IMG/VR virus record: IMGVR_UViG_3300045971_000344
Location: 62,001-126,000 of that record
Direction: 5' to 3' (one strand)
DNA length: 64,000 nt
In this document: in pieces, positions 16,730-38,662 of the stretch
Numbering within the stretch: the stretch's first letter is position 1
Layout of the letters: each line of letters opens with the position of its first letter
The notes under the pieces: model-generated
Seen by the model: only the letters and a program-made list of their open reading frames with translations
Told to the model about the DNA's origin: nothing
Database searches by the model: none
Made by a program: the position numbers and the translations under genes

Positions 16730-18709
16730 ATGAAGTTTTCAGATGTAGTAGCTGATCTAAAGAAAAGCGGATTATCCGAGGCTAAGGCTCTTGAAGTCGT
16801 AAAGACCAGACTTGCCGCAAAGGGGCACGAGCTCACCCCTGTAAAGATGCAACTGTTCCATAATACTTGGGAGACTACAGAAGCCCCGGTGGTTAATAAG
16901 CCCCAAAAGACTAAGAAAGAAAGGGCGGTTAAACCGTCAGGGCCTGTAGTAATTAATCCCTTGGTCGCCCCAAGCATAGATAACGCGGACGAACTTTTTA
17001 AAGCTCTTGCTACTTTTGGACTCGCAGTAATAGCCTGGACAAATGGGGTGAAGTTAGACCCAATTAGACAGCTCTTGTCAACTAATAAGCCCACCTTAGA
17101 TAGCTTCTTCAAAAACTCTAAGATGAATACAACCGCGTATAATGTAATATGCGGGTTAATTTTAGAGAAAAAAGCGTACAGCGCAGACAAAAGAAAGGCC
17201 GATGTTACCGCCTTTGGAAATGATTTAAAAGGAATACCTGATATTTTGTCTTCAAGGCAATATAAGTTATTACCAGCCAAAGTAACCTATCTAAAGAACA
17301 TAGCAGGATATTTGAAATCTAGTGCACCCACTGATAATGCTTATAAAAATATCGTAAATAAGGCCTCCTCTATTAGGGTCCCTCAAGCATCCGCCTTATT
17401 TACGTCCCACGTTGCCGAAAAGGTTAATCTTCCAGCTAACATAGGCGAAATGGTAACCAACTATAAAAAATTAAATAAAAAATTCGGTGGGAATGAAGGT
17501 TACACTATTCCAACAGACACTTTGAAAAAATATAGAGATACTCCTACAAAGGAATACACTAATTATTGTGCAATTGAAAAGGATTTGAATGCTCAACTTA
17601 AGTTGTTGACCCGGGTTGTAGTAGATAGTAGTGGGCAACAGACGATGGATGTGGAAGACTTTAAGAAACAGATAAAAGCAAAAGGTTTTGACTTTAATAA
17701 AGTTCCCGTTGGATTCATTGGTCGTATTGATGCTCAAGGAAAGTTCTATACAAAAGAAGGGTACTTGCTAAAGGACCAGCCTTCTGGTGTAATAAAAACA
17801 ATGAGTACAAAAGCGTATAATTCTAAAGATGGAACTGGTGCATACTGTGTGTACTTAAAAGCTGGTGGAAAGGCCCAACGTTGTTACACCATGATGCACC
17901 ATAGCGGTAAGCGAGAAGATAAGAAACAAGATATCGTAGACGATTTTATTAAGAATATGGTCGCCTATAGAAAACACTGGATGAAGGACTTAAAGGCTGG
18001 GTCCAAGATCTTAACAGACAAAGCAATAGCTGCATTGGTTATTGAAATAATGTTCCAGCTCTGTCCGAGACCGGGCTACGAAGAACATGGAAACAATAAG
18101 AAATTTGAAAATACAAAAGGGTTTATTTATCTTACCCGAGGAGAAGTTAAGCTCGAAGGTAACGATATTCACTTTAAATACACAGATAAGAACGGACCTC
18201 AGCATTTAATTTACACTAAGGGAGAAATGTACGGATCAGTTAGTGATGATACCCTTGTAGTTAACTGCTTAAAGAAATTAATGGAGAATAAAGATAAAGA
18301 TGAGTATTTATGGAAATACAGTGGAGATAACGTTGACTACGACCAGATTAAGAATTATGCAAGATCTGTAATACCCGGGTTTAACTTACATAAGTTTAGG
18401 AATTCTAAAGCGTCAATGATGGCAAAAGACATGCTAGGTGCGTGTAAACTCCCTAAAGGTTCTACCCCTAAAGAAGTATCAGATTACTACATGGATGTAA
18501 TGACAAAGGTAGGAGAAGAACTAGGTCATAGATCGGGTGAAGAAGCGAGTCCCTCAATGGCAATTTCTTCATATGTCTTAAAAAGCATCTCCAATGAGTT
18601 CTTTGATAGGTATGATGTTAGTCCTACTCAAAAAATAGCTGCTCAGATAAATACTGCAGAAGCTTCATCTTCGGGGTTGACGGTCCACATAGGCCGAAGA
18701 AAGTCATGA
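16730..18709 (+). CDS. type IB DNA topoisomerase-like protein with long N-terminal extension
   Basis: pentad R (CPRPG), K (FKYTDKNG), R (HKFRN), H (LGHR), Y (SSYV) in poxvirus TopIB order and spacing. Confidence 0.8.
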   Translation: MKFSDVVADLKKSGLSEAKALEVVKTRLAAKGHELTPVKMQLFHNTWETTEAPVVNKPQKTKKERAVKPSGPVVINPLVAPSIDNADELFKALATFGLAVIAWTNGVKLDPIRQLLSTNKPTLDSFFKNSKMNTTAYNVICGLILEKKAYSADKRKADVTAFGNDLKGIPDILSSRQYKLLPAKVTYLKNIAGYLKSSAPTDNAYKNIVNKASSIRVPQASALFTSHVAEKVNLPANIGEMVTNYKKLNKKFGGNEGYTIPTDTLKKYRDTPTKEYTNYCAIEKDLNAQLKLLTRVVVDSSGQQTMDVEDFKKQIKAKGFDFNKVPVGFIGRIDAQGKFYTKEGYLLKDQPSGVIKTMSTKAYNSKDGTGAYCVYLKAGGKAQRCYTMMHHSGKREDKKQDIVDDFIKNMVAYRKHWMKDLKAGSKILTDKAIAALVIEIMFQLCPRPGYEEHGNNKKFENTKGFIYLTRGEVKLEGNDIHFKYTDKNGPQHLIYTKGEMYGSVSDDTLVVNCLKKLMENKDKDEYLWKYSGDNVDYDQIKNYARSVIPGFNLHKFRNSKASMMAKDMLGACKLPKGSTPKEVSDYYMDVMTKVGEELGHRSGEEASPSMAISSYVLKSISNEFFDRYDVSPTQKIAAQINTAEASSSGLTVHIGRRKS

Positions 18710-19991: not shown

Positions 19992-21386
19992 GTGAGAGTG
20001 GGATGGGGTATGCCAAAGATATTTGACTGTTTTACGTTCTTCAATGAGTTTGAACTTCTGGAAATTCGTTTGAACGAGTTAAAAGATGTTGTAGACACTT
20101 TTGTTATCTGCGAATCCAGTTATACCTTTACGGGCAAACCTAAGCAGTTGTTATTGGCAAATAACTTGGGCGCCCTTAAAGGGTTTAACGTAAAATTACT
20201 GGCGTACAGCCCACACACTCCAGCTGAAAATGCTTGGGATAATGAACGGGGGCAAAGGGCATATCTAAAGGTAGGTCTGGACGAACTGGCTATTGAAGAC
20301 AATGACTTGGTTATGCTTACAGACGTGGATGAGATACCATCTGCCGAGATCATAAGAAAGATTAATCCAATTCAGATAATTGATTTAGAAATGGAGACAT
20401 CTTATTACTATGTGAACAATAGGACTAGCGAAGTTTGTTACGCGCCTAAGCTATTTAAATCACACTGGTTAAAAAGCTTTAGCATTGACCAAATACGGAA
20501 CATGAATCCTGGGTATTTCGTAGCAAATTCAGGAAATCATTTTTCTTACTTAGGTGGGATTGAGCGTATTAAAGATAAAATTGAGTCGTTCTCCCACCAA
20601 GAGTTTAATAATGAGGCATTTAATACGACTGAGAAATTAGAGCAGAAATTGAGCTCTAACGTAGATCTGTTTAATCGTAAATTGGATTATCGGACAATAC
20701 CTTTGTCTGCAGTAAGGAACTGTCCACAGTATTTATTGGATAATCAAGAACGCTTTTCACACATGATAAAGGTTACCCTACCTCAGTTGGATCTACCTCA
20801 GGTTACGCTAATTGCTATTGATTGTGTTGACCCAGTTAGAGCAGAACGAGTCTTGGAGATTTGTAAGGGTCATTGTAACTTCGGGTCAATAAAGCTCTTA
20901 ACCTCTGGTTATACCTCTAGTGAGTACGCAGTAAAGATTTCTAATATAGGATCTCTTAAGGAGTATACTGAGTTTATACTAACGGAACTGTATAAGCACA
21001 TAGACACCGAATACGTTATGCTTGTCCAGCACGATGGGTACATCTTGGATTCGTCTAAGTGGGACCCGGAATTCTTAAAATATGACTATATTGGGGCACC
21101 TTGGGATTCAAGGTTATTAGACCAGAAGGTTTCAAATAACTACTTGGTCGGTAATGGGGGCTTTAGCTTAAGGTCCAAAAAGTTATGCAAGCTCACGGCT
21201 AAAATGAGTCATAGATTGTTGAGACATGAATTTGAAGATGTTTCGATATGTCAGCTCAATAGGTCATATCTAGAAACCTTCGGTATTAAGTACGCGCCCG
21301 TAGAGCTCGCAAGACAGTTTAGCTGGGAAACTGAGAGTAGACCACCTGGTGGTACTTTTGGGTTTCACGGTAAGGACAAACTTTAA
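19992..21386 (+). CDS. glycosyltransferase family 17-like domain fused to DUF5672-like domain (start probably ATG 20010)
   Basis: FDCFTFFNEFELLEIRLNEL..VDTFVICES; QHDGYI...WDPEFLKYDYIGAPW...VGNGGFSLRSKK. Confidence 0.85.
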   Translation: MRVGWGMPKIFDCFTFFNEFELLEIRLNELKDVVDTFVICESSYTFTGKPKQLLLANNLGALKGFNVKLLAYSPHTPAENAWDNERGQRAYLKVGLDELAIEDNDLVMLTDVDEIPSAEIIRKINPIQIIDLEMETSYYYVNNRTSEVCYAPKLFKSHWLKSFSIDQIRNMNPGYFVANSGNHFSYLGGIERIKDKIESFSHQEFNNEAFNTTEKLEQKLSSNVDLFNRKLDYRTIPLSAVRNCPQYLLDNQERFSHMIKVTLPQLDLPQVTLIAIDCVDPVRAERVLEICKGHCNFGSIKLLTSGYTSSEYAVKISNIGSLKEYTEFILTELYKHIDTEYVMLVQHDGYILDSSKWDPEFLKYDYIGAPWDSRLLDQKVSNNYLVGNGGFSLRSKKLCKLTAKMSHRLLRHEFEDVSICQLNRSYLETFGIKYAPVELARQFSWETESRPPGGTFGFHGKDKL

Positions 21387-21569: not shown

Positions 21570-21644
21570 CACGGGTTACCTCAGTGGTAGAGGACATTCC
21601 TCATAGGGATAGAAGTCGCAGGTTCGATTCCTGCACCCGTATCA
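21570..21644 (+). tRNA. tRNA with CAT anticodon (Met or Ile2), atypical
   Basis: cloverleaf: ACGGGT/ACCCGT acceptor, CCTC/GAGG D arm, CTCATAG loop, GCAGG-TTCGATT-CCTGC T arm; no intact CCA. Confidence 0.85.
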
Positions 21645-21648
21645 AGAT

Positions 21649-21803
21649 TTCCAAGTCACGGTTAAGTATGAGAACTATCAGACTTCACGCTAAGCGTTTT
21701 CTCTTGTTAGCTTGCACTGACTACTTTTTAAACGTATTCCTTACAAAAAACCGAGCCACTGTGGGTGGGAAGAATTATTCAGGGGAAGTTACGTGACTTG
21801 GAA
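21649..21803 (+). ncRNA. candidate ~155-nt structured RNA between two tRNAs
   Basis: perfect 12-bp terminal inverted repeat TTCCAAGTCACG/CGTGACTTGGAA. Confidence 0.4.
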
Positions 21804-21814
21804 CAAAATTTTAT

Positions 21815-21889
21815 AGGGGATTCGCCAAGCGGTAAGGCAACTGGTTTTGATCCAGTCATTCACTCGTTCGATCCGAGTATCCTCTGCCA
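21815..21889 (+). tRNA. tRNA-Gln(TTG)
   Basis: AGGGGAT/ATCCTCT acceptor, ACTGG-TTTTGAT-CCAGT anticodon arm, TTCGATC T loop, encoded CCA. Confidence 0.95.
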
Positions 21890-21999: not shown

Positions 22000-22854
22000 A
22001 TGAAATTAAAAGTATGCATAGAGGAATCTCTAGCTATAGATAAATATTGTTTCAACTTCCCTAAGGATGACCAAAAAGCTCAGTATGCAAAGGACTTCGC
22101 AAAACAGCTAAAAAGATATTTACTTGAAGGTTTTACTGAGCCAAACACTATAAACAAAATTGGATATTTAGCCCCTAAAGAACTTATTGAAAGTAAACCT
22201 TTAGTAGTATATAGAATATGGAAATTCACCCCAACAAGAGCTTTGAGACTAGCATGCGAAGATTCTTTTAAGATAAAACTCAAGGGTAGGCCCGCATATT
22301 CAGCTACGCTTGATAATATTCTTAAAATGAAGTCTCTAAAAGAGAACATTTTAGAGACTATCTTAGATTGTATTCACGATGGAACTATTGTAATAGTCTC
22401 TAAGGTTAAAACGCATAAGTATATAAACTTAGTTAAATCCGTAGAGTGGTTAATTTCTAACTATGGAGGAGATAAACCTGAAGTAGTACCCGTAAGTAAC
22501 GCACGAAAAACAAAAAAAGTAAACAGTACTCCAGACACTGTTTCTTTAGATGAAAGTGCAGTTAAAATACTGGAAAAAGAAAAAGAAGTTATAGTTCTAG
22601 ATAAAGTTGAATGGATGAAAAACTCTGTAGTAGCTATTGGCTGTTATAACTGTGACAACCAAAGCGCTAATCTTTTACCACCTAATTTAAACTCAGTAAA
22701 AATAAGTTTTGACTTAGCTGAAGACATAGATAAAAATATGATAAAGTCTGAACGAGAGTTTAGAAATAAAAATAACCCAGTTAAACTAATAAAAAGCTTA
22801 ACTCTAAGAGAGAAAAAAGAATTAGAGGAAATGCAAAGGCAAAGGGACTTCTAA
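22000..22854 (+). CDS. hypothetical protein (MKLKVCIEES N-terminus)
   Basis: 284-aa ORF. Confidence 0.8.
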   Translation: MKLKVCIEESLAIDKYCFNFPKDDQKAQYAKDFAKQLKRYLLEGFTEPNTINKIGYLAPKELIESKPLVVYRIWKFTPTRALRLACEDSFKIKLKGRPAYSATLDNILKMKSLKENILETILDCIHDGTIVIVSKVKTHKYINLVKSVEWLISNYGGDKPEVVPVSNARKTKKVNSTPDTVSLDESAVKILEKEKEVIVLDKVEWMKNSVVAIGCYNCDNQSANLLPPNLNSVKISFDLAEDIDKNMIKSEREFRNKNNPVKLIKSLTLREKKELEEMQRQRDF

Positions 22855-22877
22855 AAATTCTTAGATACCCTTAGAGT

Positions 22878-23387
22878 TTGATTTTAGTGAGTAAAGTCTG
22901 CACGATGGTAGTTATGTATCCTAGGGGAACATCGTGGTGAGTGAGGCCCTCTTATAAGTCCCACAAGGGCATAGAGGCGCAGGGGATTGCCGAAGTGGAG
23001 AAGCCCAGGAGCAGGCAAGGATGTATGCGTGAAGTAGTATAAGTACTTGAGACGTGGCTACAAAATGAGAAGCCGGAGTACTGAGAAAGCGTGTGCGAGG
23101 GTATCCAACTAGACAGGACTAACCGTAAAGTAAGGCCTAACGATAAGGCAGCGGCGAACAGTAACTATGCACAAAACCTGTACTCTATTTGTTTATGGGG
23201 AGCATAGCGAAGATAACGGGTACTTGAGAGTGTGCCGAAACTCTCCTTGATTCGGATGGGTGCATTATTAGCGTTTACAACTTCTAGCGAATTTAAGTCC
23301 TAGGATGGGACGTATATTCAAGTGCGTGTGCTTGCGCTCTGATGCACTGCTTGTGGTGGTTTGAGTCCACCAACTCACTAAAATCAA
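22878..23387 (+). ncRNA. large structured ncRNA, GOLLD/ROOL-like
   Basis: ~510-nt gap without a long ORF, closed by a perfect 15-bp stem, with T-loop-like GGTGG-TTTGAGT-CCACC at the 3' end, near tRNAs and tmRNA. Confidence 0.6.
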
Positions 23388-23418
23388 GATCAAAAATAAC
23401 CTAAAAGGGAGAAACAAA

Positions 23419-23685
23419 ATGCCAGGTATTCCAACTTTAATCAAAGGTTCCGTAAAGAACGCAGCAGGTGTAGGTATTGATAGTGCGGCAGTTAAAGGTG
23501 TACTAGGTACTGGATCCTTTACTACTACAACAGCCGCAGATGGATCGTATTTTGCATCGTGGGTAGGAACAGGTACGATTATTATTACAGCTACAAAAAC
23601 GGGGTATCAAACTACATCGGTTAGCTGTCCTATAACTAAACAAGGTGGAACTGTTACTGCACCTACTATTGTAATGCCTGTATGA
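23419..23685 (+). CDS. small Ig/prealbumin-like fold protein (carboxypeptidase-regulatory-like); possible virion decoration protein
   Basis: IKGSVKNAAGVGI..A.V...TTTAADGSY...ITATKTGYQT. Confidence 0.6.
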   Translation: MPGIPTLIKGSVKNAAGVGIDSAAVKGVLGTGSFTTTTAADGSYFASWVGTGTIIITATKTGYQTTSVSCPITKQGGTVTAPTIVMPV

Positions 23686-23840
23686 TAGAAGAACCTAAAG
23701 AAGAGATTAGTCAAGAAGAAATTGAGAAAAAGATGTGCCAGTGGAAAAAGTTTGAAATAGCTATGATTATTTTTATAGGTACGCTGTTTACTGGAGGTAT
23801 CTGGTTTCTAAGCCGGTTACACCATATAATAGCAAAATGA
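23682..23840 (+). CDS. small membrane protein (52 aa, not in ORF track)
   Basis: ATGA overlap; IAMIIFIGTLFTGGIWF helix. Confidence 0.5.
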   Translation: MIEEPKEEISQEEIEKKMCQWKKFEIAMIIFIGTLFTGGIWFLSRLHHIIAK

Positions 23841-23844
23841 TTTA

Positions 23845-24257
23845 GGGGGCGTAAAGGTTTCGACTGGCGGTAATAGATATTAGTTGCGCTCGGAGGATGA
23901 TGGTTGGCCTCTTGAATAACCCATCACTTATTAATTGCCAACTTTGCAAATGCAGTAGCAGACAACTATGGTTTTGAGGCTCGCCTCGCTGCCTGAGTTG
24001 TAACAATCCCTACAGAAAATCGTAGGTACGGTAAGTAGTAGATAACATTTGTAGCTACTCGCCGCGTAACAGAAGATGTGGATGGTTAGCCGCCCACTGA
24101 CTAATGAACTCCAGGTGTTGGTCTGGCTAAACACCGACTAGGTGGGAAAGATTTGTCTATTTTGTTAATAGCCACCGAAATACTAAATAGACTATGAGCG
24201 TAGGGACTATATTGAAAAGCTGTTAGGACGTGGGTTCAACTCCCACCGCTTCCACCA
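23845..24257 (+). ncRNA. ssrA: tmRNA
   Basis: 5' GGGGGCGTAAAGGTTTCGAC, 3' GTGGG-TTCAACT-CCCAC CGCTTCC ACCA, internal tag ORF 23937..23996 ANFANAVADNYGFEARLAA*. Confidence 0.95.
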
Positions 24258-24432: not shown

Positions 24433-24897
24433 ATGGGCAACCTAAAGTGTTGCGCCGCAAAAGGTATACGGAGATATCCTATGGTATCGCTACCATGCCG
24501 GACGGAGCCAAAAAAAATTATGAGTAATGACCTTGTTATTATAGAAGAAGGCATAATGCGAGCCTACCCAAAGTTTGATTTGGCTCGCAATAGAGTGACT
24601 ATCTTCAAGGGTAAAGAGTTTGACATAAATGATTTTACTTGCCTTCAAATGCTGACTAATCATGACCCAGGCGCTGTGGCTATGGTAACTATTGATGGTC
24701 AAGACCTTTGGATCTATTATGATAATGGTGCTCCAAAACGAGTAGTTGGCATCGAAGAACGAAAAGTCTTGTGGGAGAAATATACTGAGTTTATGATAGC
24801 AGTTCGTAGGAAGATGTTACCTGTAACTAATCCAGAACATCCAGATTATGTTGAGCCAAAGCTAATAAAAGAGAGCAAGGTAATCGTTATTAGTTAG
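24433..24897 (+). CDS. hypothetical protein (true start probably ATG 24520)
   Basis: upstream part overlaps hairpin-rich sequence. Confidence 0.65.
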   Translation: MGNLKCCAAKGIRRYPMVSLPCRTEPKKIMSNDLVIIEEGIMRAYPKFDLARNRVTIFKGKEFDINDFTCLQMLTNHDPGAVAMVTIDGQDLWIYYDNGAPKRVVGIEERKVLWEKYTEFMIAVRRKMLPVTNPEHPDYVEPKLIKESKVIVIS

Positions 24898-25056
24898 TAG
24901 GGAAGTTAGCACTCTGAACATCTGCTGCCACGGCTAACGGCTTGTAATGTGGGGTAATGCAAAATAATTAGGGAGTGTTTTTGTCGGCGCCACCCTAGGC
25001 GAGTACATCTCGGGCTTGAGCTCTGTACTCGCCACCCTAAATAACTAGGAGGTCAA

Positions 25057-25224
25057 ATGAATAGTGCAGATACGTATAAGATTATTCGGGCCTTTGATAT
25101 TGATGAACTAGCTGAGAAGGTAAATGAAGCACTTTTATTAGGTTATAAAGCAATAGGCGGAATGGTAATAGAAAGTCACGCAAAGATGGGTAAGATATAC
25201 TATCAAAGTTTAGTTACTATCTAA
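25057..25224 (+). CDS. DUF1737-like small protein (55 aa, not in ORF track)
   Basis: AGGAGG RBS; YKII...ELAEKVNEALLLGYKAIGG...YYQSL. Confidence 0.65.
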   Translation: MNSADTYKIIRAFDIDELAEKVNEALLLGYKAIGGMVIESHAKMGKIYYQSLVTI

Positions 25225-25363
25225 ACAGGAGGATTTATCCAAATGAAAAGCAAAAGAGTGTTGGGTGAGATCTGTGGGAAATGTAAATCTGTTGTTTACC
25301 TCAAAAACGGACATTTACAATGCGGGTGTGCTAAAATCCTATAAATAATAGGAAACGTTTAGT

Positions 25364-27353: not shown

Positions 27354-28442
27354 ATGACAATGATAGCAACCTCAGCCTGGACCGGCAGTATGAGCAACAA
27401 TCAGTACATAATTTACACGAGTCCTGCGGGGACGGAATTGACCTCACAGTACCAGACGCAACAGGAAGTTCCACAGGAGATACCGGAACTGGTGGGACCT
27501 CTGCCAAAAGAAGAGGCAGACAGAAGAAAGAACCGCCAGAAACAGATTCAACAGATAGCGAAGTTAAAGAAGAAGGGTAAAGTAACAGCGGGGTCTAATA
27601 TACCACCTAAGGTATTCTTTAAATTTGTGAAGTCCAAACTGGACTCGATTGACCAAGACCAGTTACAGAGAAATCTTGATAAGCTGGTTAAGTTAGTGGT
27701 TGTCACTGAGGAAATCGGACAGCAGGCTTTGTTTGAAGAATTCTCTACCCAGCTTGCCATAGCAGTCAGGGAACAAGAAGCATCAGCAGCAGGTTACAAC
27801 AAGCGAATTGAACTCCGTCATATCCAGCGTTTTATCAAATCCGTAACAGATAGACTGGTTAAGTTCAAACCGCTGGAGGAATTCCCTAGGGTAATACCTT
27901 CCAATATCATGAAGGAAATTAAACATTGTCAGGATCTTTGTATCTTCGATGAGTTTCATGTACTGTTCATCGACCATGTAGAGTCGTCTAAGGAAAATGA
28001 AGAGTTGAAGACCAATAAGCAGAAGGTAAAAGAAAAAGACCCTATCTTATTCGGGGCCTTCAAATTTCAACCAGACGTGCTGTACTATATAGTGGATTGG
28101 ATAGATGAATACTGCGATTTGTCTTTTAGAGAACTTTTGAAGGCCCTTACTCTTGATGACCCTACATTTGAGCTTAGTCTTGTACAAACTGTAAATAAAG
28201 AGTATGTGGATTCGATTGTAAAGGAAGTCCATGATAGAGTTGAACGGTTGAAGAAAACACGACCATCTAATTTTAAAGATCTAATGGCACAAGAAGAGCA
28301 GGTAAAAGAACAGAGAAAGAAACAAAGAGCAACAACAAGCTCTAATACTCCTACTAAGAAAGAAGATCAGTCATTAGGCGATAAGATAGTTGATGCACTA
28401 AAAATCCCCTTTGGACGAAAGAAAGGAAAAGCTAATGTTTAA
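27354..28442 (+). CDS. hypothetical protein
   Basis: 362 aa, AGGAGG RBS. Confidence 0.85.
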   Translation: MTMIATSAWTGSMSNNQYIIYTSPAGTELTSQYQTQQEVPQEIPELVGPLPKEEADRRKNRQKQIQQIAKLKKKGKVTAGSNIPPKVFFKFVKSKLDSIDQDQLQRNLDKLVKLVVVTEEIGQQALFEEFSTQLAIAVREQEASAAGYNKRIELRHIQRFIKSVTDRLVKFKPLEEFPRVIPSNIMKEIKHCQDLCIFDEFHVLFIDHVESSKENEELKTNKQKVKEKDPILFGAFKFQPDVLYYIVDWIDEYCDLSFRELLKALTLDDPTFELSLVQTVNKEYVDSIVKEVHDRVERLKKTRPSNFKDLMAQEEQVKEQRKKQRATTSSNTPTKKEDQSLGDKIVDALKIPFGRKKGKANV

Positions 28443-37888: not shown

Positions 37889-38210
37889 AGGAAAGCCTAT
37901 GAAAAAGATATTTGAAGTAGAATACCCAGACTATTGTTCATATAACGCTTCGGATATTCAGGAAGCTTTACAGGATGCAACTGGTTGGGCAGTCGCTTTT
38001 ATCGTTAAAGAGATAATAGTTGAGGTGGGAAAATCTGAGTATAAGGAGAATTTGATGAACGCACAGGAATTTAAAGACTGGTCGGATTCATACAGAAAGA
38101 AAAGTTCGTACCACATGATGTGCAAAGTAGATAAAAGAATGATAGACCTACTTATGTCTCAAAGACAAAAGGAACTAAATGAAGAAGAAAAGAGTTTTGA
38201 CAGAAATTAA
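37851..38210 (+). CDS. hypothetical protein (start probably 37899)
   Basis: AAGGAA RBS. Confidence 0.6.
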   Translation: MQKQTWIGRILFKGKPMKKIFEVEYPDYCSYNASDIQEALQDATGWAVAFIVKEIIVEVGKSEYKENLMNAQEFKDWSDSYRKKSSYHMMCKVDKRMIDLLMSQRQKELNEEEKSFDRN

Positions 38211-38267
38211 CTAAACTGTAAATGATATGTAAATAATAGAGTTGTGGACTGTTTACTCCCAAGGACA

Positions 38268-38436
38268 CAGATTGCCAGACGCAGGATTAGATACCCTTCG
38301 ACTAGAGCGGTGTTGGCATAAGAGTAGGCAGTCTGCAAATAGTTGGGTAATTATGGGCGGTCGCCCCGTTCGGTACAGTTAGGAAATAATGAGGAGGGCG
38401 TACTCTGAGAATGTTCAACCCTGTACTAATTACCCA
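38268..38436 (+). ncRNA. candidate structured RNA
   Basis: CAGATTGCC/GGCAGTCTG and TGGGTAATTA/TAATTACCCA stems in a gap without ORFs. Confidence 0.4.
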
Positions 38437-38440
38437 TTAG

Positions 38441-38662
38441 TTGGTGGTTAGTCTAAGTCAAGGACACTAAGAGAACAAGACCAGCGGGGTATAATGGTAC
38501 GTGGGTTAATAACCTGTGGTGCAGTAGTACTCTATGCGGATAGTGTAGAGAAGCGCATAATCTATCCTGACGTATGAATTAGGGGCGCAATGTTCTTATC
38601 AGGTCTTTCCTGCAACACTTACCTTCTCCGAAGATGTTGGTATAACTTAGGCTAACCACCAA
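38441..38662 (+). ncRNA. candidate ~220-nt structured RNA
   Basis: 18-bp closing stem TTGGTGGTTAGTCTAAGT/ACTTAGGCTAACCACCAA (one G-U). Confidence 0.5.

What the first reader, a model, noticed from the sequence alone, without database searches (positions are those of the whole stretch)
22878..23387. ~510-nt large structured ncRNA (GOLLD/ROOL-like or a new class)
This gap has no long ORF and is GC-richer than the flanking genes. A perfect 15-bp stem (TTGATTTTAGTGAGT 22878-22892 / ACTCACTAAAATCAA 23373-23387) closes it. A tRNA T-arm mimic (GGTGG TTTGAGT CCACC) lies directly before the 3' strand, and there are internal hairpins such as GAGAG-TGTGCCGAAA-CTCTC. Large ornate RNAs with 3' T-loop ends near phage tRNA clusters (GOLLD, ROOL) are established and their function is unknown. 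I found no RNase P or group I/II core motifs.
Basis: partly seen in the sequence, partly recalled or inferred. Interest (0 to 1): 0.8.

Follow-up and report, generated by a model that had tools for sequence, protein, structure and literature searches.

The report
Orphan phage RNA with tRNA-like end
A 510-base gene-free, GC-rich stretch in the tRNA/tmRNA cluster of a giant pond phage is probably an unclassified structured RNA whose two ends and a tRNA-style T-arm stack into one long helix, but no distant relatives or expression data exist to prove it.

Summary
22855-23418 has no ORF in any frame and is the GC-richest 500 nt of the window. A perfect 15-bp stem closes it (22878-22892 / 23373-23387). 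A T-arm-like hairpin (23355-23371) lies 1 nt before the 3' strand.

Rfam 15 gives no match, even at E<=10, to GOLLD, ROOL, OLE, RNase P, tmRNA, tRNA or group I/II introns, so it belongs to no described family.

The strongest positive evidence is statistical. This T-arm pattern occurs four times on the + strand: tRNA-Met, tRNA-Gln, the tmRNA and this element. In 847 kb scanned, it is the only such hairpin followed by a long-range perfect stem of 12 bp or more. The topology therefore resembles a tmRNA: an acceptor/T-arm minihelix closing a body of about 460 nt.

One close relative, a 153-nt contig from another pond study, starts its similarity at the first base of the stem. It differs only in one hairpin loop.

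No distant homolog turned up in any collection, so there is no covariation. No RNA-seq run is listed, and folding energy is uninformative.

Verdict: a plausible orphan ncRNA gene (about 0.5) in a jumbo phage likely infecting Geobacteraceae. Its function is unknown and its interest moderate.

The parts
22877..22892 (+). 5' strand of terminal helix P1. 15 perfect pairs at 22878-22892, plus a terminal U-G at 22877/23388.
   Evidence: Pair probability 0.96 in the partition function. The relative in run X3 begins its similarity at 22877.
22893..22900 (+). Junction AAAGUCUG between P1 and hairpin P2. Identical in the X3 relative.
   Evidence: No pairing partner established.
22901..22936 (+). Hairpin P2: 7-bp stem 22901-22907 / 22930-22936 with a 22-nt loop carrying the palindrome CCUAGG (22920-22925).
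   Evidence: In the X3 relative, all 3 substitutions and 6 inserted or deleted letters fall in the loop (22910-22927). The stem and CCUAGG are unchanged. Enforcing this hairpin costs only 2.2 kcal/mol against the MFE.
22937..23353 (+). Body of about 417 nt; its global fold is undetermined.

Best-supported local helices:
- 23042-23048 / 23076-23082 enclosing 23055-23059 / 23071-23075
- 23135-23138 / 23146-23149
- 23176-23181 / 23216-23221
- 23297-23302 / 23306-23311
- 23321-23327 / 23342-23348

Pseudoknots proposed by eye only:
- 23226-23230 / 23241-23245 with 23235-23239 / 23251-23255
- 22983-22985 / 23004-23006 with 22987-22991 / 23014-23018

A second CCUAGG lies at 23299-23304.
   Evidence: Pair probabilities 0.7-0.97. 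An alternative near-isoenergetic fold exists. Palindromes are listed. The pseudoknots were not tested statistically.
23354..23372 (+). T-arm-like hairpin: 5-bp stem GGUGG/CCACC (plus U23354-A23372) and a 7-nt loop UUUGAGU. The loop matches tRNA T-loop positions U54, U55, R57 and A58, and the closing pair matches G53-C61. Position 56 is U instead of C.
   Evidence: (P 0.88)
23373..23388 (+). 3' strand of P1. It is contiguous with the T-stem, so P1 and the T-stem can stack into a helix of about 22 bp, as the acceptor and T arms do in tRNA and tmRNA.
21570..21889 (+). Context: tRNA-Met (21570-21643) and tRNA-Gln (21815-21889), about 1 kb upstream on the same strand.
23845..24257 (+). Context: full-length tmRNA 457 nt downstream on the same strand.
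   Evidence: (121 bits)

Best explanation
The region most likely encodes a stable non-coding RNA of about 510 nt on the + strand. It sits in the RNA-gene cluster (tRNA-Met, tRNA-Gln, this element, tmRNA) of a 295-kb jumbo phage.

Shown:
- The two ends form a perfect 15-16-bp helix.
- That helix is contiguous with a T-arm-like hairpin.
- The element is ORF-free and GC-rich.
- It is a discrete module, conserved from its first base in a second pond population.

Inferred:
- The terminal helix plus T-arm mimics the acceptor/T-arm stack of tRNA and tmRNA. It would define and protect the ends of the RNA when it is cut out of a long + strand transcript.
- Candidate processing routes are host tRNA enzymes (RNase P, 3' trimming, CCA addition, T-loop modification) or RNase III acting on the helix of about 22 bp.
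- The body of about 460 nt, made of hairpins and possible pseudoknots, carries the unknown function.

Weak lead: the loop palindrome CCUAGG, kept in the relative while the loop around it changed, could mediate loop-loop contacts within or between molecules.
For: - No coding capacity in six frames, and no single-stop-type frame. No Pfam match to ten stop-free pieces.
- GC-richest 500 nt of the window, +3.4 sd. The other GC peaks are the tRNA region, the tmRNA region and one GC-rich gene at 27354-28442.
- The T-arm pattern on the + strand occurs only at the three known RNA genes and here.
- It is the only T-arm-like hairpin in 847 kb followed by a perfect long-range stem of 12 bp or more.
- G-U pairs in P1 and in the hairpins 23297-23311 and 23321-23348 fit the + strand. 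The MFE is -159.6 on the + strand against -125.9 on the - strand.
- All neighbouring genes and RNA genes are on the + strand.
- The X3 relative is identical over 22877-22909 and 22928-22961, with changes only in the P2 loop. Its upstream 53 nt do not align.
- The sequence is identical in three independent assemblies, so it is not an assembly artefact.
Against: - No homolog beyond one near-identical fragment, so there is no covariation at all.
  - INPHARED and PLSDB.
  - IMG/VR.
  - JGI metagenomes.
  - GTDB genomes.
  - Translated-antisense searches.
- No RNA run is listed.
- Folding-energy z-scores are unremarkable.
- The global fold is ambiguous.
- The 15-bp stem alone arises in 11% of shuffled windows.
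- No promoter or terminator brackets the element.
- The T-loop has U where tRNAs have the near-invariant C56.
- No CCA is encoded.
- The helix continues 8 bp past a 7-bp acceptor, which would hinder RNase P.
Confidence: 0.5

Rival explanations
1. A non-autonomous mobile DNA element (MITE-like) whose 15-bp perfect terminal inverted repeats are transposase-binding ends. Its GC-rich interior would be foreign DNA with no RNA function.
For: - The inverted repeat is perfect and sits at the exact ends.
- GC content is foreign to the phage.
- The X3 relative carries the element with an unalignable upstream flank, as expected for an insertion in another context.
- A GC-rich PHROG 'transposase' gene lies 4 kb downstream.
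Against: - No target-site duplication flanks the repeats.
- No second copy of the repeat or the interior exists in the 64-kb window, in IMG/VR, or in the metagenome and genome scans.
- The flanks of the transposase-like gene lack the repeat.
- A mobile-element model does not explain a T-arm-like hairpin abutting the right repeat, in a cluster of tRNA-type genes.
Confidence: 0.12
2. A dead tRNA-type gene. An ancestral tRNA-like gene of the cluster was split by an insertion of about 400 nt after its 5' acceptor strand. That left an intact acceptor/T-arm pairing around decaying, functionless sequence.
For: - The T-arm and complementary acceptor strands are tRNA-like.
- At 80% of its threshold, ARAGORN draws a weak class II cloverleaf at 23286-23380.
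- The location is inside a tRNA/tmRNA cluster.
Against: - The low-threshold cloverleaf is not significant: about 20-29 such calls per 64 kb arise in shuffled sequence.
- A proposed duplication of the 5' tRNA part is not significant: alignment score 14 against a shuffle mean of 14.9.
- The helix is 15 bp rather than 7 bp, and the phage's real tRNAs show no leader-trailer pairing.
- The supposed junk next to the 5' strand is identical in a second population while a loop evolved.
- The high GC content is maintained.
Confidence: 0.12
3. A cis-acting processing or stability element, or long leader, for the downstream 88-aa gene (23419-23685). The long terminal helix would be an RNase III-type site, and the structured RNA would protect or regulate the mRNA that starts 31 nt after it.
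For: - No terminator separates the element from the 88-aa gene.
- That gene's Shine-Dalgarno-like AGGGAG lies directly after the helix.
- All genes are co-oriented.
- A coaxial helix of about 22 bp is the size RNase III recognises (established knowledge).
Against: - 510 nt is far longer than known phage processing hairpins.
- The only homolog of the 88-aa protein (55% identity) sits in a bacterial contig without this element.
- The T-arm feature is not explained.
Confidence: 0.1
4. Non-transcribed or functionless spacer, or a DNA-level site such as a replication origin, a packaging site or a remnant of acquired DNA. The stem and hairpin would be coincidental.
For: - The 15-bp stem alone is not significant.
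- Fold energies are ordinary.
- There is no conservation beyond a near-identical relative, and no expression data.
Against: - The joint occurrence of the ORF-free GC peak, boundary-matching stem, adjacent T-arm and RNA-gene neighbourhood is unlikely by chance.
- The module boundary is conserved in the relative.
Confidence: 0.12

Closest known systems
tmRNA (SsrA; Rfam RF00023 and clan CL00001)
   Same: Topology: a 5' strand and a 3' strand pair as an acceptor-type helix that stacks on a T-arm, and the two strands are separated by several hundred nucleotides of hairpins and pseudoknot-like elements. It lies 457 nt from a bona fide phage tmRNA, on the same strand.
   Different: - No covariance-model match even at E<=10.
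- ARAGORN finds no tmRNA, even with a lowered threshold.
- No G3-U70 pair, no encoded CCA and no recognisable tag reading frame.
- The helix is 15-16 bp, not 7.
- No sequence similarity to the neighbouring tmRNA.
GOLLD and ROOL RNAs (Rfam RF01071, RF03087)
   Same: Large non-coding RNAs of phages and prophages, often next to tRNA genes, of unknown function (PMC12286853). The size is in the ROOL range. A palindromic loop motif here recalls the symmetric kissing loops seen in GOLLD and OLE (PMC12286853), as a lead only.
   Different: No match to either model. There is no covariation-supported ornate structure and no family of relatives. Oligomerisation is untested.
T4 RNAC and RNAD (small stable RNAs of the T4 tRNA region)
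   Same: Phage-encoded stable RNAs transcribed from the tRNA gene region, with unknown roles (PMC3014915).
   Different: From my own knowledge those RNAs are about 120-140 nt, and this element is 510 nt. Sequence relatedness could not be tested because no model or sequence was at hand.
YrlA / bacterial Y RNAs
   Same: Non-coding RNAs with a tRNA-like module including a T-arm; some are RNase P and CCA-adding substrates (PMC4201824).
   Different: In YrlA the acceptor-like stem is a hairpin between the T and D arms, and the RNAs are about 100 nt and lie next to a Ro60 gene (PMC4201824). Here there is no Rfam match and no TROVE-domain hit among the 40 proteins scanned.

Membership tests
GOLLD RNA (RF01071) | Match to the family covariance model (conserved 3' half) | tested here: not met
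   No hit at gathering score on the window, nor at E<=10 on 22600-23700 or 22871-23394.
GOLLD RNA (RF01071) | Phage or prophage location near tRNA genes; many members exceed 800 nt | tested here: inconclusive
   The location criterion is met. Many GOLLD members exceed 800 nt (PMC12286853); at 510 nt this element is far below that.
ROOL RNA (RF03087) | Match to the family covariance model | tested here: not met
ROOL/GOLLD/OLE | RNA-only homo-oligomer (nanocage or dimer) | not testable with these tools
   Needs SEC-MALS or cryo-EM. The only lead is the loop palindrome CCUAGG, which is not statistically enriched.
OLE RNA | Match to the family covariance model | tested here: not met
tmRNA | Covariance-model or ARAGORN detection | tested here: not met
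   (none at 80% threshold)
tmRNA | Acceptor stem stacked on a T-arm, enclosing a large insert | tested here: met
tmRNA | G3-U70 alanine identity pair, 3' CCA and a tag-peptide frame | tested here: not met
   The sequence reads AGUGAGU/ACUCACU followed by AAAA. No tag was called.
tRNA | Cloverleaf with D and anticodon arms | tested here: not met
   No call at default settings. The low-threshold call is at the background rate of shuffled sequence. No RF00005 match.
RNase P RNA (bacterial A/B, archaeal, nuclear) | Covariance-model match; P4 helix formed by the CR-I and CR-V segments | tested here: not met
   No model match. GAGUAAAGUCUG resembles CR-I by eye, but I found no complementary CR-V/P4 partner in the sequence.
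Group I / group II introns | Covariance-model match and an interrupted host gene | tested here: not met
   No match. The upstream ORF ends with its own stop, and the downstream ORF has its own ribosome-binding site and a free-standing homolog.
YrlA / Y RNA | Covariance-model match and an adjacent Ro60 (TROVE) gene | tested here: not met
   No RNA match. No TROVE hit among the 40 proteins scanned against Pfam. The remaining ORFs of the window were not scanned.
MITE-type mobile element | Terminal inverted repeats | tested here: met
   15-bp perfect inverted repeat at the exact ends
MITE-type mobile element | Target-site duplication and multiple genomic copies | tested here: not met
   The flanks are AGAGT and GATCA, with no duplication. 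The window holds a single copy. The other 231 kb of the contig were not examined in full.

The most novel reading that the evidence does not exclude
The element is the first seen member of a new class of large phage RNAs built on a tmRNA-like chassis. An extended acceptor/T-arm helix would recruit host tRNA-processing or tRNA-binding factors, and would close a folded body of about 460 nt with its own function. That function could be self-association through palindromic loops as in GOLLD/ROOL/OLE, or sequestration of a host translation or RNA-repair factor. It would work alongside the phage's own tRNAs and tmRNA during infection of Geobacteraceae.
Probability: 0.3. Interest if true: 0.75.

Novelty: new variant of a known kind. 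Interest (0 to 1): 0.45.

Why it matters
Large structured RNAs beside phage tRNA genes (GOLLD, ROOL) are among the least understood RNAs, and only a few classes are known. If this element is expressed and folded, it would add a class with a different design: a tmRNA-like acceptor/T-arm closure. That would suggest that giant phages diversify tRNA-type scaffolds for purposes beyond decoding and ribosome rescue. It would also give a concrete test object, because RNase P, CCA-adding and pseudouridine-synthase assays are simple. As it stands it is a single-lineage candidate, so its main value is as a flagged locus for transcriptomics of Geobacteraceae phages.

Tried and rejected
1. Known RNA families. 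Three Rfam searches gave only noise: freshwater-2 at 20 bits against a cut-off of 49.9, PyrD leader, and human lncRNA fragments.

2. Recoded or decayed protein gene. Every frame mixes at least two stop types. There were no Pfam hits on ten stop-free pieces. The 70-aa antisense piece gave only two low-complexity hits at E about 1e-4 among 1.84 billion representatives. The 57-aa piece shared no words with any protein.

3. Homologs by synteny. The upstream 284-aa and topoisomerase IB-like proteins have no relatives other than self. Distant relatives of the glycosyltransferase (31-39% identity) lack the element. The one homolog of the 88-aa protein is in an unrelated bacterial contig.

4. Homologs by DNA motif.
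   - The 15-mer GAGTAAAGTCTGCAC gave 59 IMG/VR stretches, every one but the source contig itself a chance match (in what look like coding sequences).
   - A gapped two-motif pattern and a 17-mer returned only the source contig.
   - A 20-mer in JGI metagenomes returned nothing.
   - The T-arm 20-mer hit three copies of one protein gene.
   - A 22-mer in GTDB genomes returned nothing.

5. The tmRNA as anchor. The tag pattern and the 5' 20-mer fetched 92 tmRNA-bearing viral loci (783 kb). None had sequence similarity or a comparable architecture.

6. tRNA with a giant insertion. ARAGORN's low-threshold cloverleaf is at background frequency.

7. Internal duplication of a tRNA 5' part. Not significant.

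8. RNase P, group I and group II readings by eye (CR-I-like GAGUAAAGUC, R/S-like elements, a GUGAG 5' end). No consistent partner strands were found and no model supported them.

9. Thermodynamic z-scores as evidence. Dropped, because the bona fide tmRNA is not distinguished either.

10. Palindrome enrichment. Not significant: total count p = 0.74, and two duplicated hexamers p = 0.08.

11. Partner protein. The 284-aa neighbour is an orphan with a poor model in the ESM Atlas (pTM 0.17) and no informative look-alike.

Full report
**Source and setting.** The window is part of IMG/VR contig IMGVR_UViG_3300045971_000344 (294,944 bp; contig position = window + 62,000) from a pond metagenome. The same sequence is present in a sister JGI sample and in a Logan assembly, so it is not an assembly artefact. 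Nearly all ORFs of 100 aa or more are on the + strand. Recognisable genes are phage-type: topoisomerase II subunits, a topoisomerase IB-like protein, ThyX and thymidylate kinase. The topoisomerase II large subunit is at most 34% identical to that of any GenBank phage. This is a deep-branching jumbo phage without close sequenced relatives.

**The observation.**
- The inverted repeat 22878-22892 / 23373-23387 is perfect over 15 bp. It extends to 16 pairs with a U-G, and to 22 nt at 86%.
- GGTGG-TTTGAGT-CCACC occupies 23355-23371, one nucleotide before the 3' strand.
- The hairpin GAGAG/CTCTC is at 23226-23245.
- The stretch 22855-23418 has 6-16 stop codons in each of the six frames (10-16 on the + strand). 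Each frame carries at least two stop-codon types, and all three + frames carry all three, which excludes a gene hidden by stop-codon reassignment.
- Ten stop-free translated pieces match no Pfam family.
- With GC 0.47 it is the GC-richest 500-nt stretch of the window (mean 0.383, sd 0.027). The lesser GC peaks are the tRNA region, the tmRNA region and one GC-rich gene.

**Is it more than chance?**
- Taken alone, the stem is not. 22 of 200 Markov shuffles of the window hold a perfect 15-bp inverted repeat within 700 nt.
- Folding energy is not informative either. The whole element has z = -1.85 on the + strand and -1.29 on the - strand. The 160-nt windows inside it range from -1.2 to +1.1, and the one spanning its 5' edge reaches -2.25. 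The neighbouring genuine tmRNA scores only -0.2 to -1.75.
- The informative statistic is the T-arm. A perfect 5-bp stem with a 7-nt loop of the form TTNRANN is expected about 1.2 times per strand in 64 kb. On the + strand it occurs exactly four times: in tRNA-Met, in tRNA-Gln, in the tmRNA and in this element.
- I then searched the window plus 92 tmRNA-bearing viral loci (847 kb, both strands). I asked for such hairpins whose 3' flank, within 1 nt, is perfectly complementary to a strand 90-1000 nt upstream. Only 11 cases reach 9 bp, and this element, at 15 bp, is the only one of 12 bp or more.
- The stem and the T-arm therefore belong together. They form the arrangement that the acceptor and T arms have in tRNA and tmRNA, with about 460 nt inserted between the 5' acceptor strand and the T-arm.

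**Neighbourhood.** The order on the + strand is as follows.

| Feature | Coordinates |
|---|---|
| tRNA-Met | 21570-21643 |
| tRNA-Gln | 21815-21889 |
| Orphan 284-aa ORF | 22000-22854 |
| This element | 22877-23388 |
| 88-aa ORF with a CarboxypepD_reg-like domain | 23419-23685 |
| 52-aa ORF | 23682-23840 |
| Complete tmRNA (121 bits) | 23845-24257 |

No sigma-70-like promoter or intrinsic terminator brackets the element. It is therefore probably made as part of a longer transcript and would need processing.

**Known families.** Rfam 15 gives no match at gathering thresholds. It gives none at E<=10 with relaxed filters on 1.1 kb or on the element alone. The only rows are noise. This excludes membership of GOLLD, ROOL, OLE, RNase P, tmRNA, tRNA, group I and II introns, HEARO and YrlA as currently modelled. 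ARAGORN finds no tRNA or tmRNA at default settings, and no tmRNA at 80% threshold. Its low-threshold cloverleaf at 23286-23380 occurs at the background rate of shuffled sequence. By eye, GAGUAAAGUCUG resembles the RNase P CR-I segment, and some segments resemble group I R/S elements. I could find no consistent pairing partners for either, so I reject both.

**Relatives.** Every route gave nothing beyond the source.
- blastn against GenBank phages and plasmids.
- Neighbour-protein synteny in IMG/VR and in the 5.8-billion-protein set.
- Six DNA motifs across IMG/VR, JGI metagenomes and GTDB genomes. All hits outside the source contig were chance matches, most of them in what look like protein-coding sequences.
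- Two searches with translated antisense pieces, meant to catch spurious ORFs called on relatives.

The single exception is run X3, from a different pond study. It holds a 153-nt contig that aligns to 22877-22961. That contig is identical except for 3 substitutions and 6 inserted or deleted letters, all within 22910-22927. Its preceding 53 nt do not align with the window. Two inferences follow:
- The element is a discrete module whose left boundary is the first base of the stem.
- The variable segment is the loop of a local hairpin (stem 22901-22907 / 22930-22936), not part of the long-range helices of the MFE fold.

Enforcing that hairpin costs only 2.2 kcal/mol and rearranges the rest of the fold, so the global structure is undetermined. 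The palindrome CCUAGG in that loop is retained in the relative and recurs at 23299-23304. It is a lead for a loop-loop contact, like the palindromic kissing loops of GOLLD and OLE (PMC12286853). Palindromes are not statistically enriched here.

**Most likely mechanism (confidence about 0.5).** I read the element as a stable + strand RNA of about 510 nt.
- Shown: the closure by a 15-16-bp helix contiguous with a T-arm-like hairpin; the absence of coding capacity; the GC enrichment; the modular conservation.
- Inferred: the coaxial helix of about 22 bp capped by a T-loop serves as the processing and stabilising handle. This would work either by mimicry of tRNA and tmRNA for host enzymes or as an RNase III site. 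Counting 12 bp from the T-loop, as RNase P does, lands on the pair G22887-C23378. The helix continues below that point, however, which would disfavour RNase P.
- Not known: the function of the body. Candidates are self-association or sequestration of a host factor.

**Rivals.**
- A MITE-like mobile element (0.12). It explains the perfect terminal repeats, the foreign GC content and the different flank in X3. But there is no target-site duplication and no second copy, and it does not explain the T-arm.
- A dead, split tRNA-type gene (0.12). It explains the acceptor/T-arm remnant. But the cloverleaf and the duplication are not significant, and the interior next to the 5' strand is conserved in X3.
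- A cis-acting leader or processing element for the 88-aa gene (0.10).
- Functionless spacer or a DNA-level site (0.12).

**Comparison with known systems.** The element works most like tmRNA in topology, and most like GOLLD/ROOL and the T4 RNAC/RNAD RNAs (PMC3014915) in genomic niche. It is a member of none of them (see the membership table). I rate it a new variant of a known kind: phage stable RNAs of the tRNA region built on a tRNA-type end. If relatives and expression are found, it would be a new class.

**Limits.**
- Read laying could be used only once, so the X3 contigs covering about 23200-23250 were not examined in detail.
- The remaining 231 kb of the contig were not scanned.
- The pseudoknots are proposals by eye.

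Noticed in passing
window 23845-24257: The phage tmRNA encodes the tag ADNYGFEARLAA. In GTDB genomes the same tag ending occurs only in tmRNAs of Geobacteraceae (L081, L092 Trichlorobacter, L095 Geobacter). These share the first 20 nt, about 30 nt around the tag, and 74% identity over the 5' 220 nt. The host is therefore probably a Geobacteraceae bacterium, although the phage has 38% GC.
   Followed up: yes
window 21649-21803: A second stem-enclosed element lies between tRNA-Met and tRNA-Gln. It has a perfect 12-bp inverted repeat (21649-21660 / 21792-21803) around 131 nt, with fold z = -2.4. About 4.6 perfect 12-bp inverted-repeat matches per window arise by chance, so it is only a lead for another small RNA or a processing stem.
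   Followed up: partly
window 22331-22359 (inside ORF 22000-22854): An 11-bp hairpin is flagged as terminator-like on the - strand. The 160-nt window 22260-22419 has the most negative fold z-score of the scanned region (-4.81), although it lies inside the orphan 284-aa ORF.
   Followed up: no
window 16730-18709: A 659-aa protein matches the eukaryotic-type topoisomerase IB catalytic core (PF01028, 2e-10) and PHROG 23460. It is an unusual enzyme for a phage and has no close relative in IMG/VR.
   Followed up: no
window 27354-28442: A GC-rich (0.45) 362-aa gene matches PHROG 10081 'transposase' (1e-21) but no Pfam family. It is possibly a mobile element in the phage genome. Its flanks do not carry the inverted repeat of the finding.
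   Followed up: partly
window 38208-38645 and 24895-25351: Two further ORF-free stretches of about 440-460 nt (GC 0.44 and 0.40) have no Rfam match at gathering score. They are possible additional non-coding elements.
   Followed up: no
L109, L128, L169, L189 (e.g. L169 7272-7452): Four tmRNA-bearing IMG/VR loci share a T-arm-like hairpin (GGAGT-TTGGAAA-ACTCC) whose 3' flank pairs over 9 bp with a strand 155 nt upstream. There is no Rfam match at E<=1. It may be a small conserved RNA, or homologous coding sequence.
   Followed up: partly
window 19992-21386: A 464-aa fusion of a glycosyltransferase family 17 domain with DUF5672. The only IMG/VR relatives match one half each, at 31-39% identity.
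   Followed up: no
window 23845-23992 in runs X1-X3: Several other contigs in the same ponds match the 5' part and tag region of the tmRNA at about 85-94% identity, some at higher depth than the phage. They are probably the host's or related bacteria's tmRNA genes.
   Followed up: no
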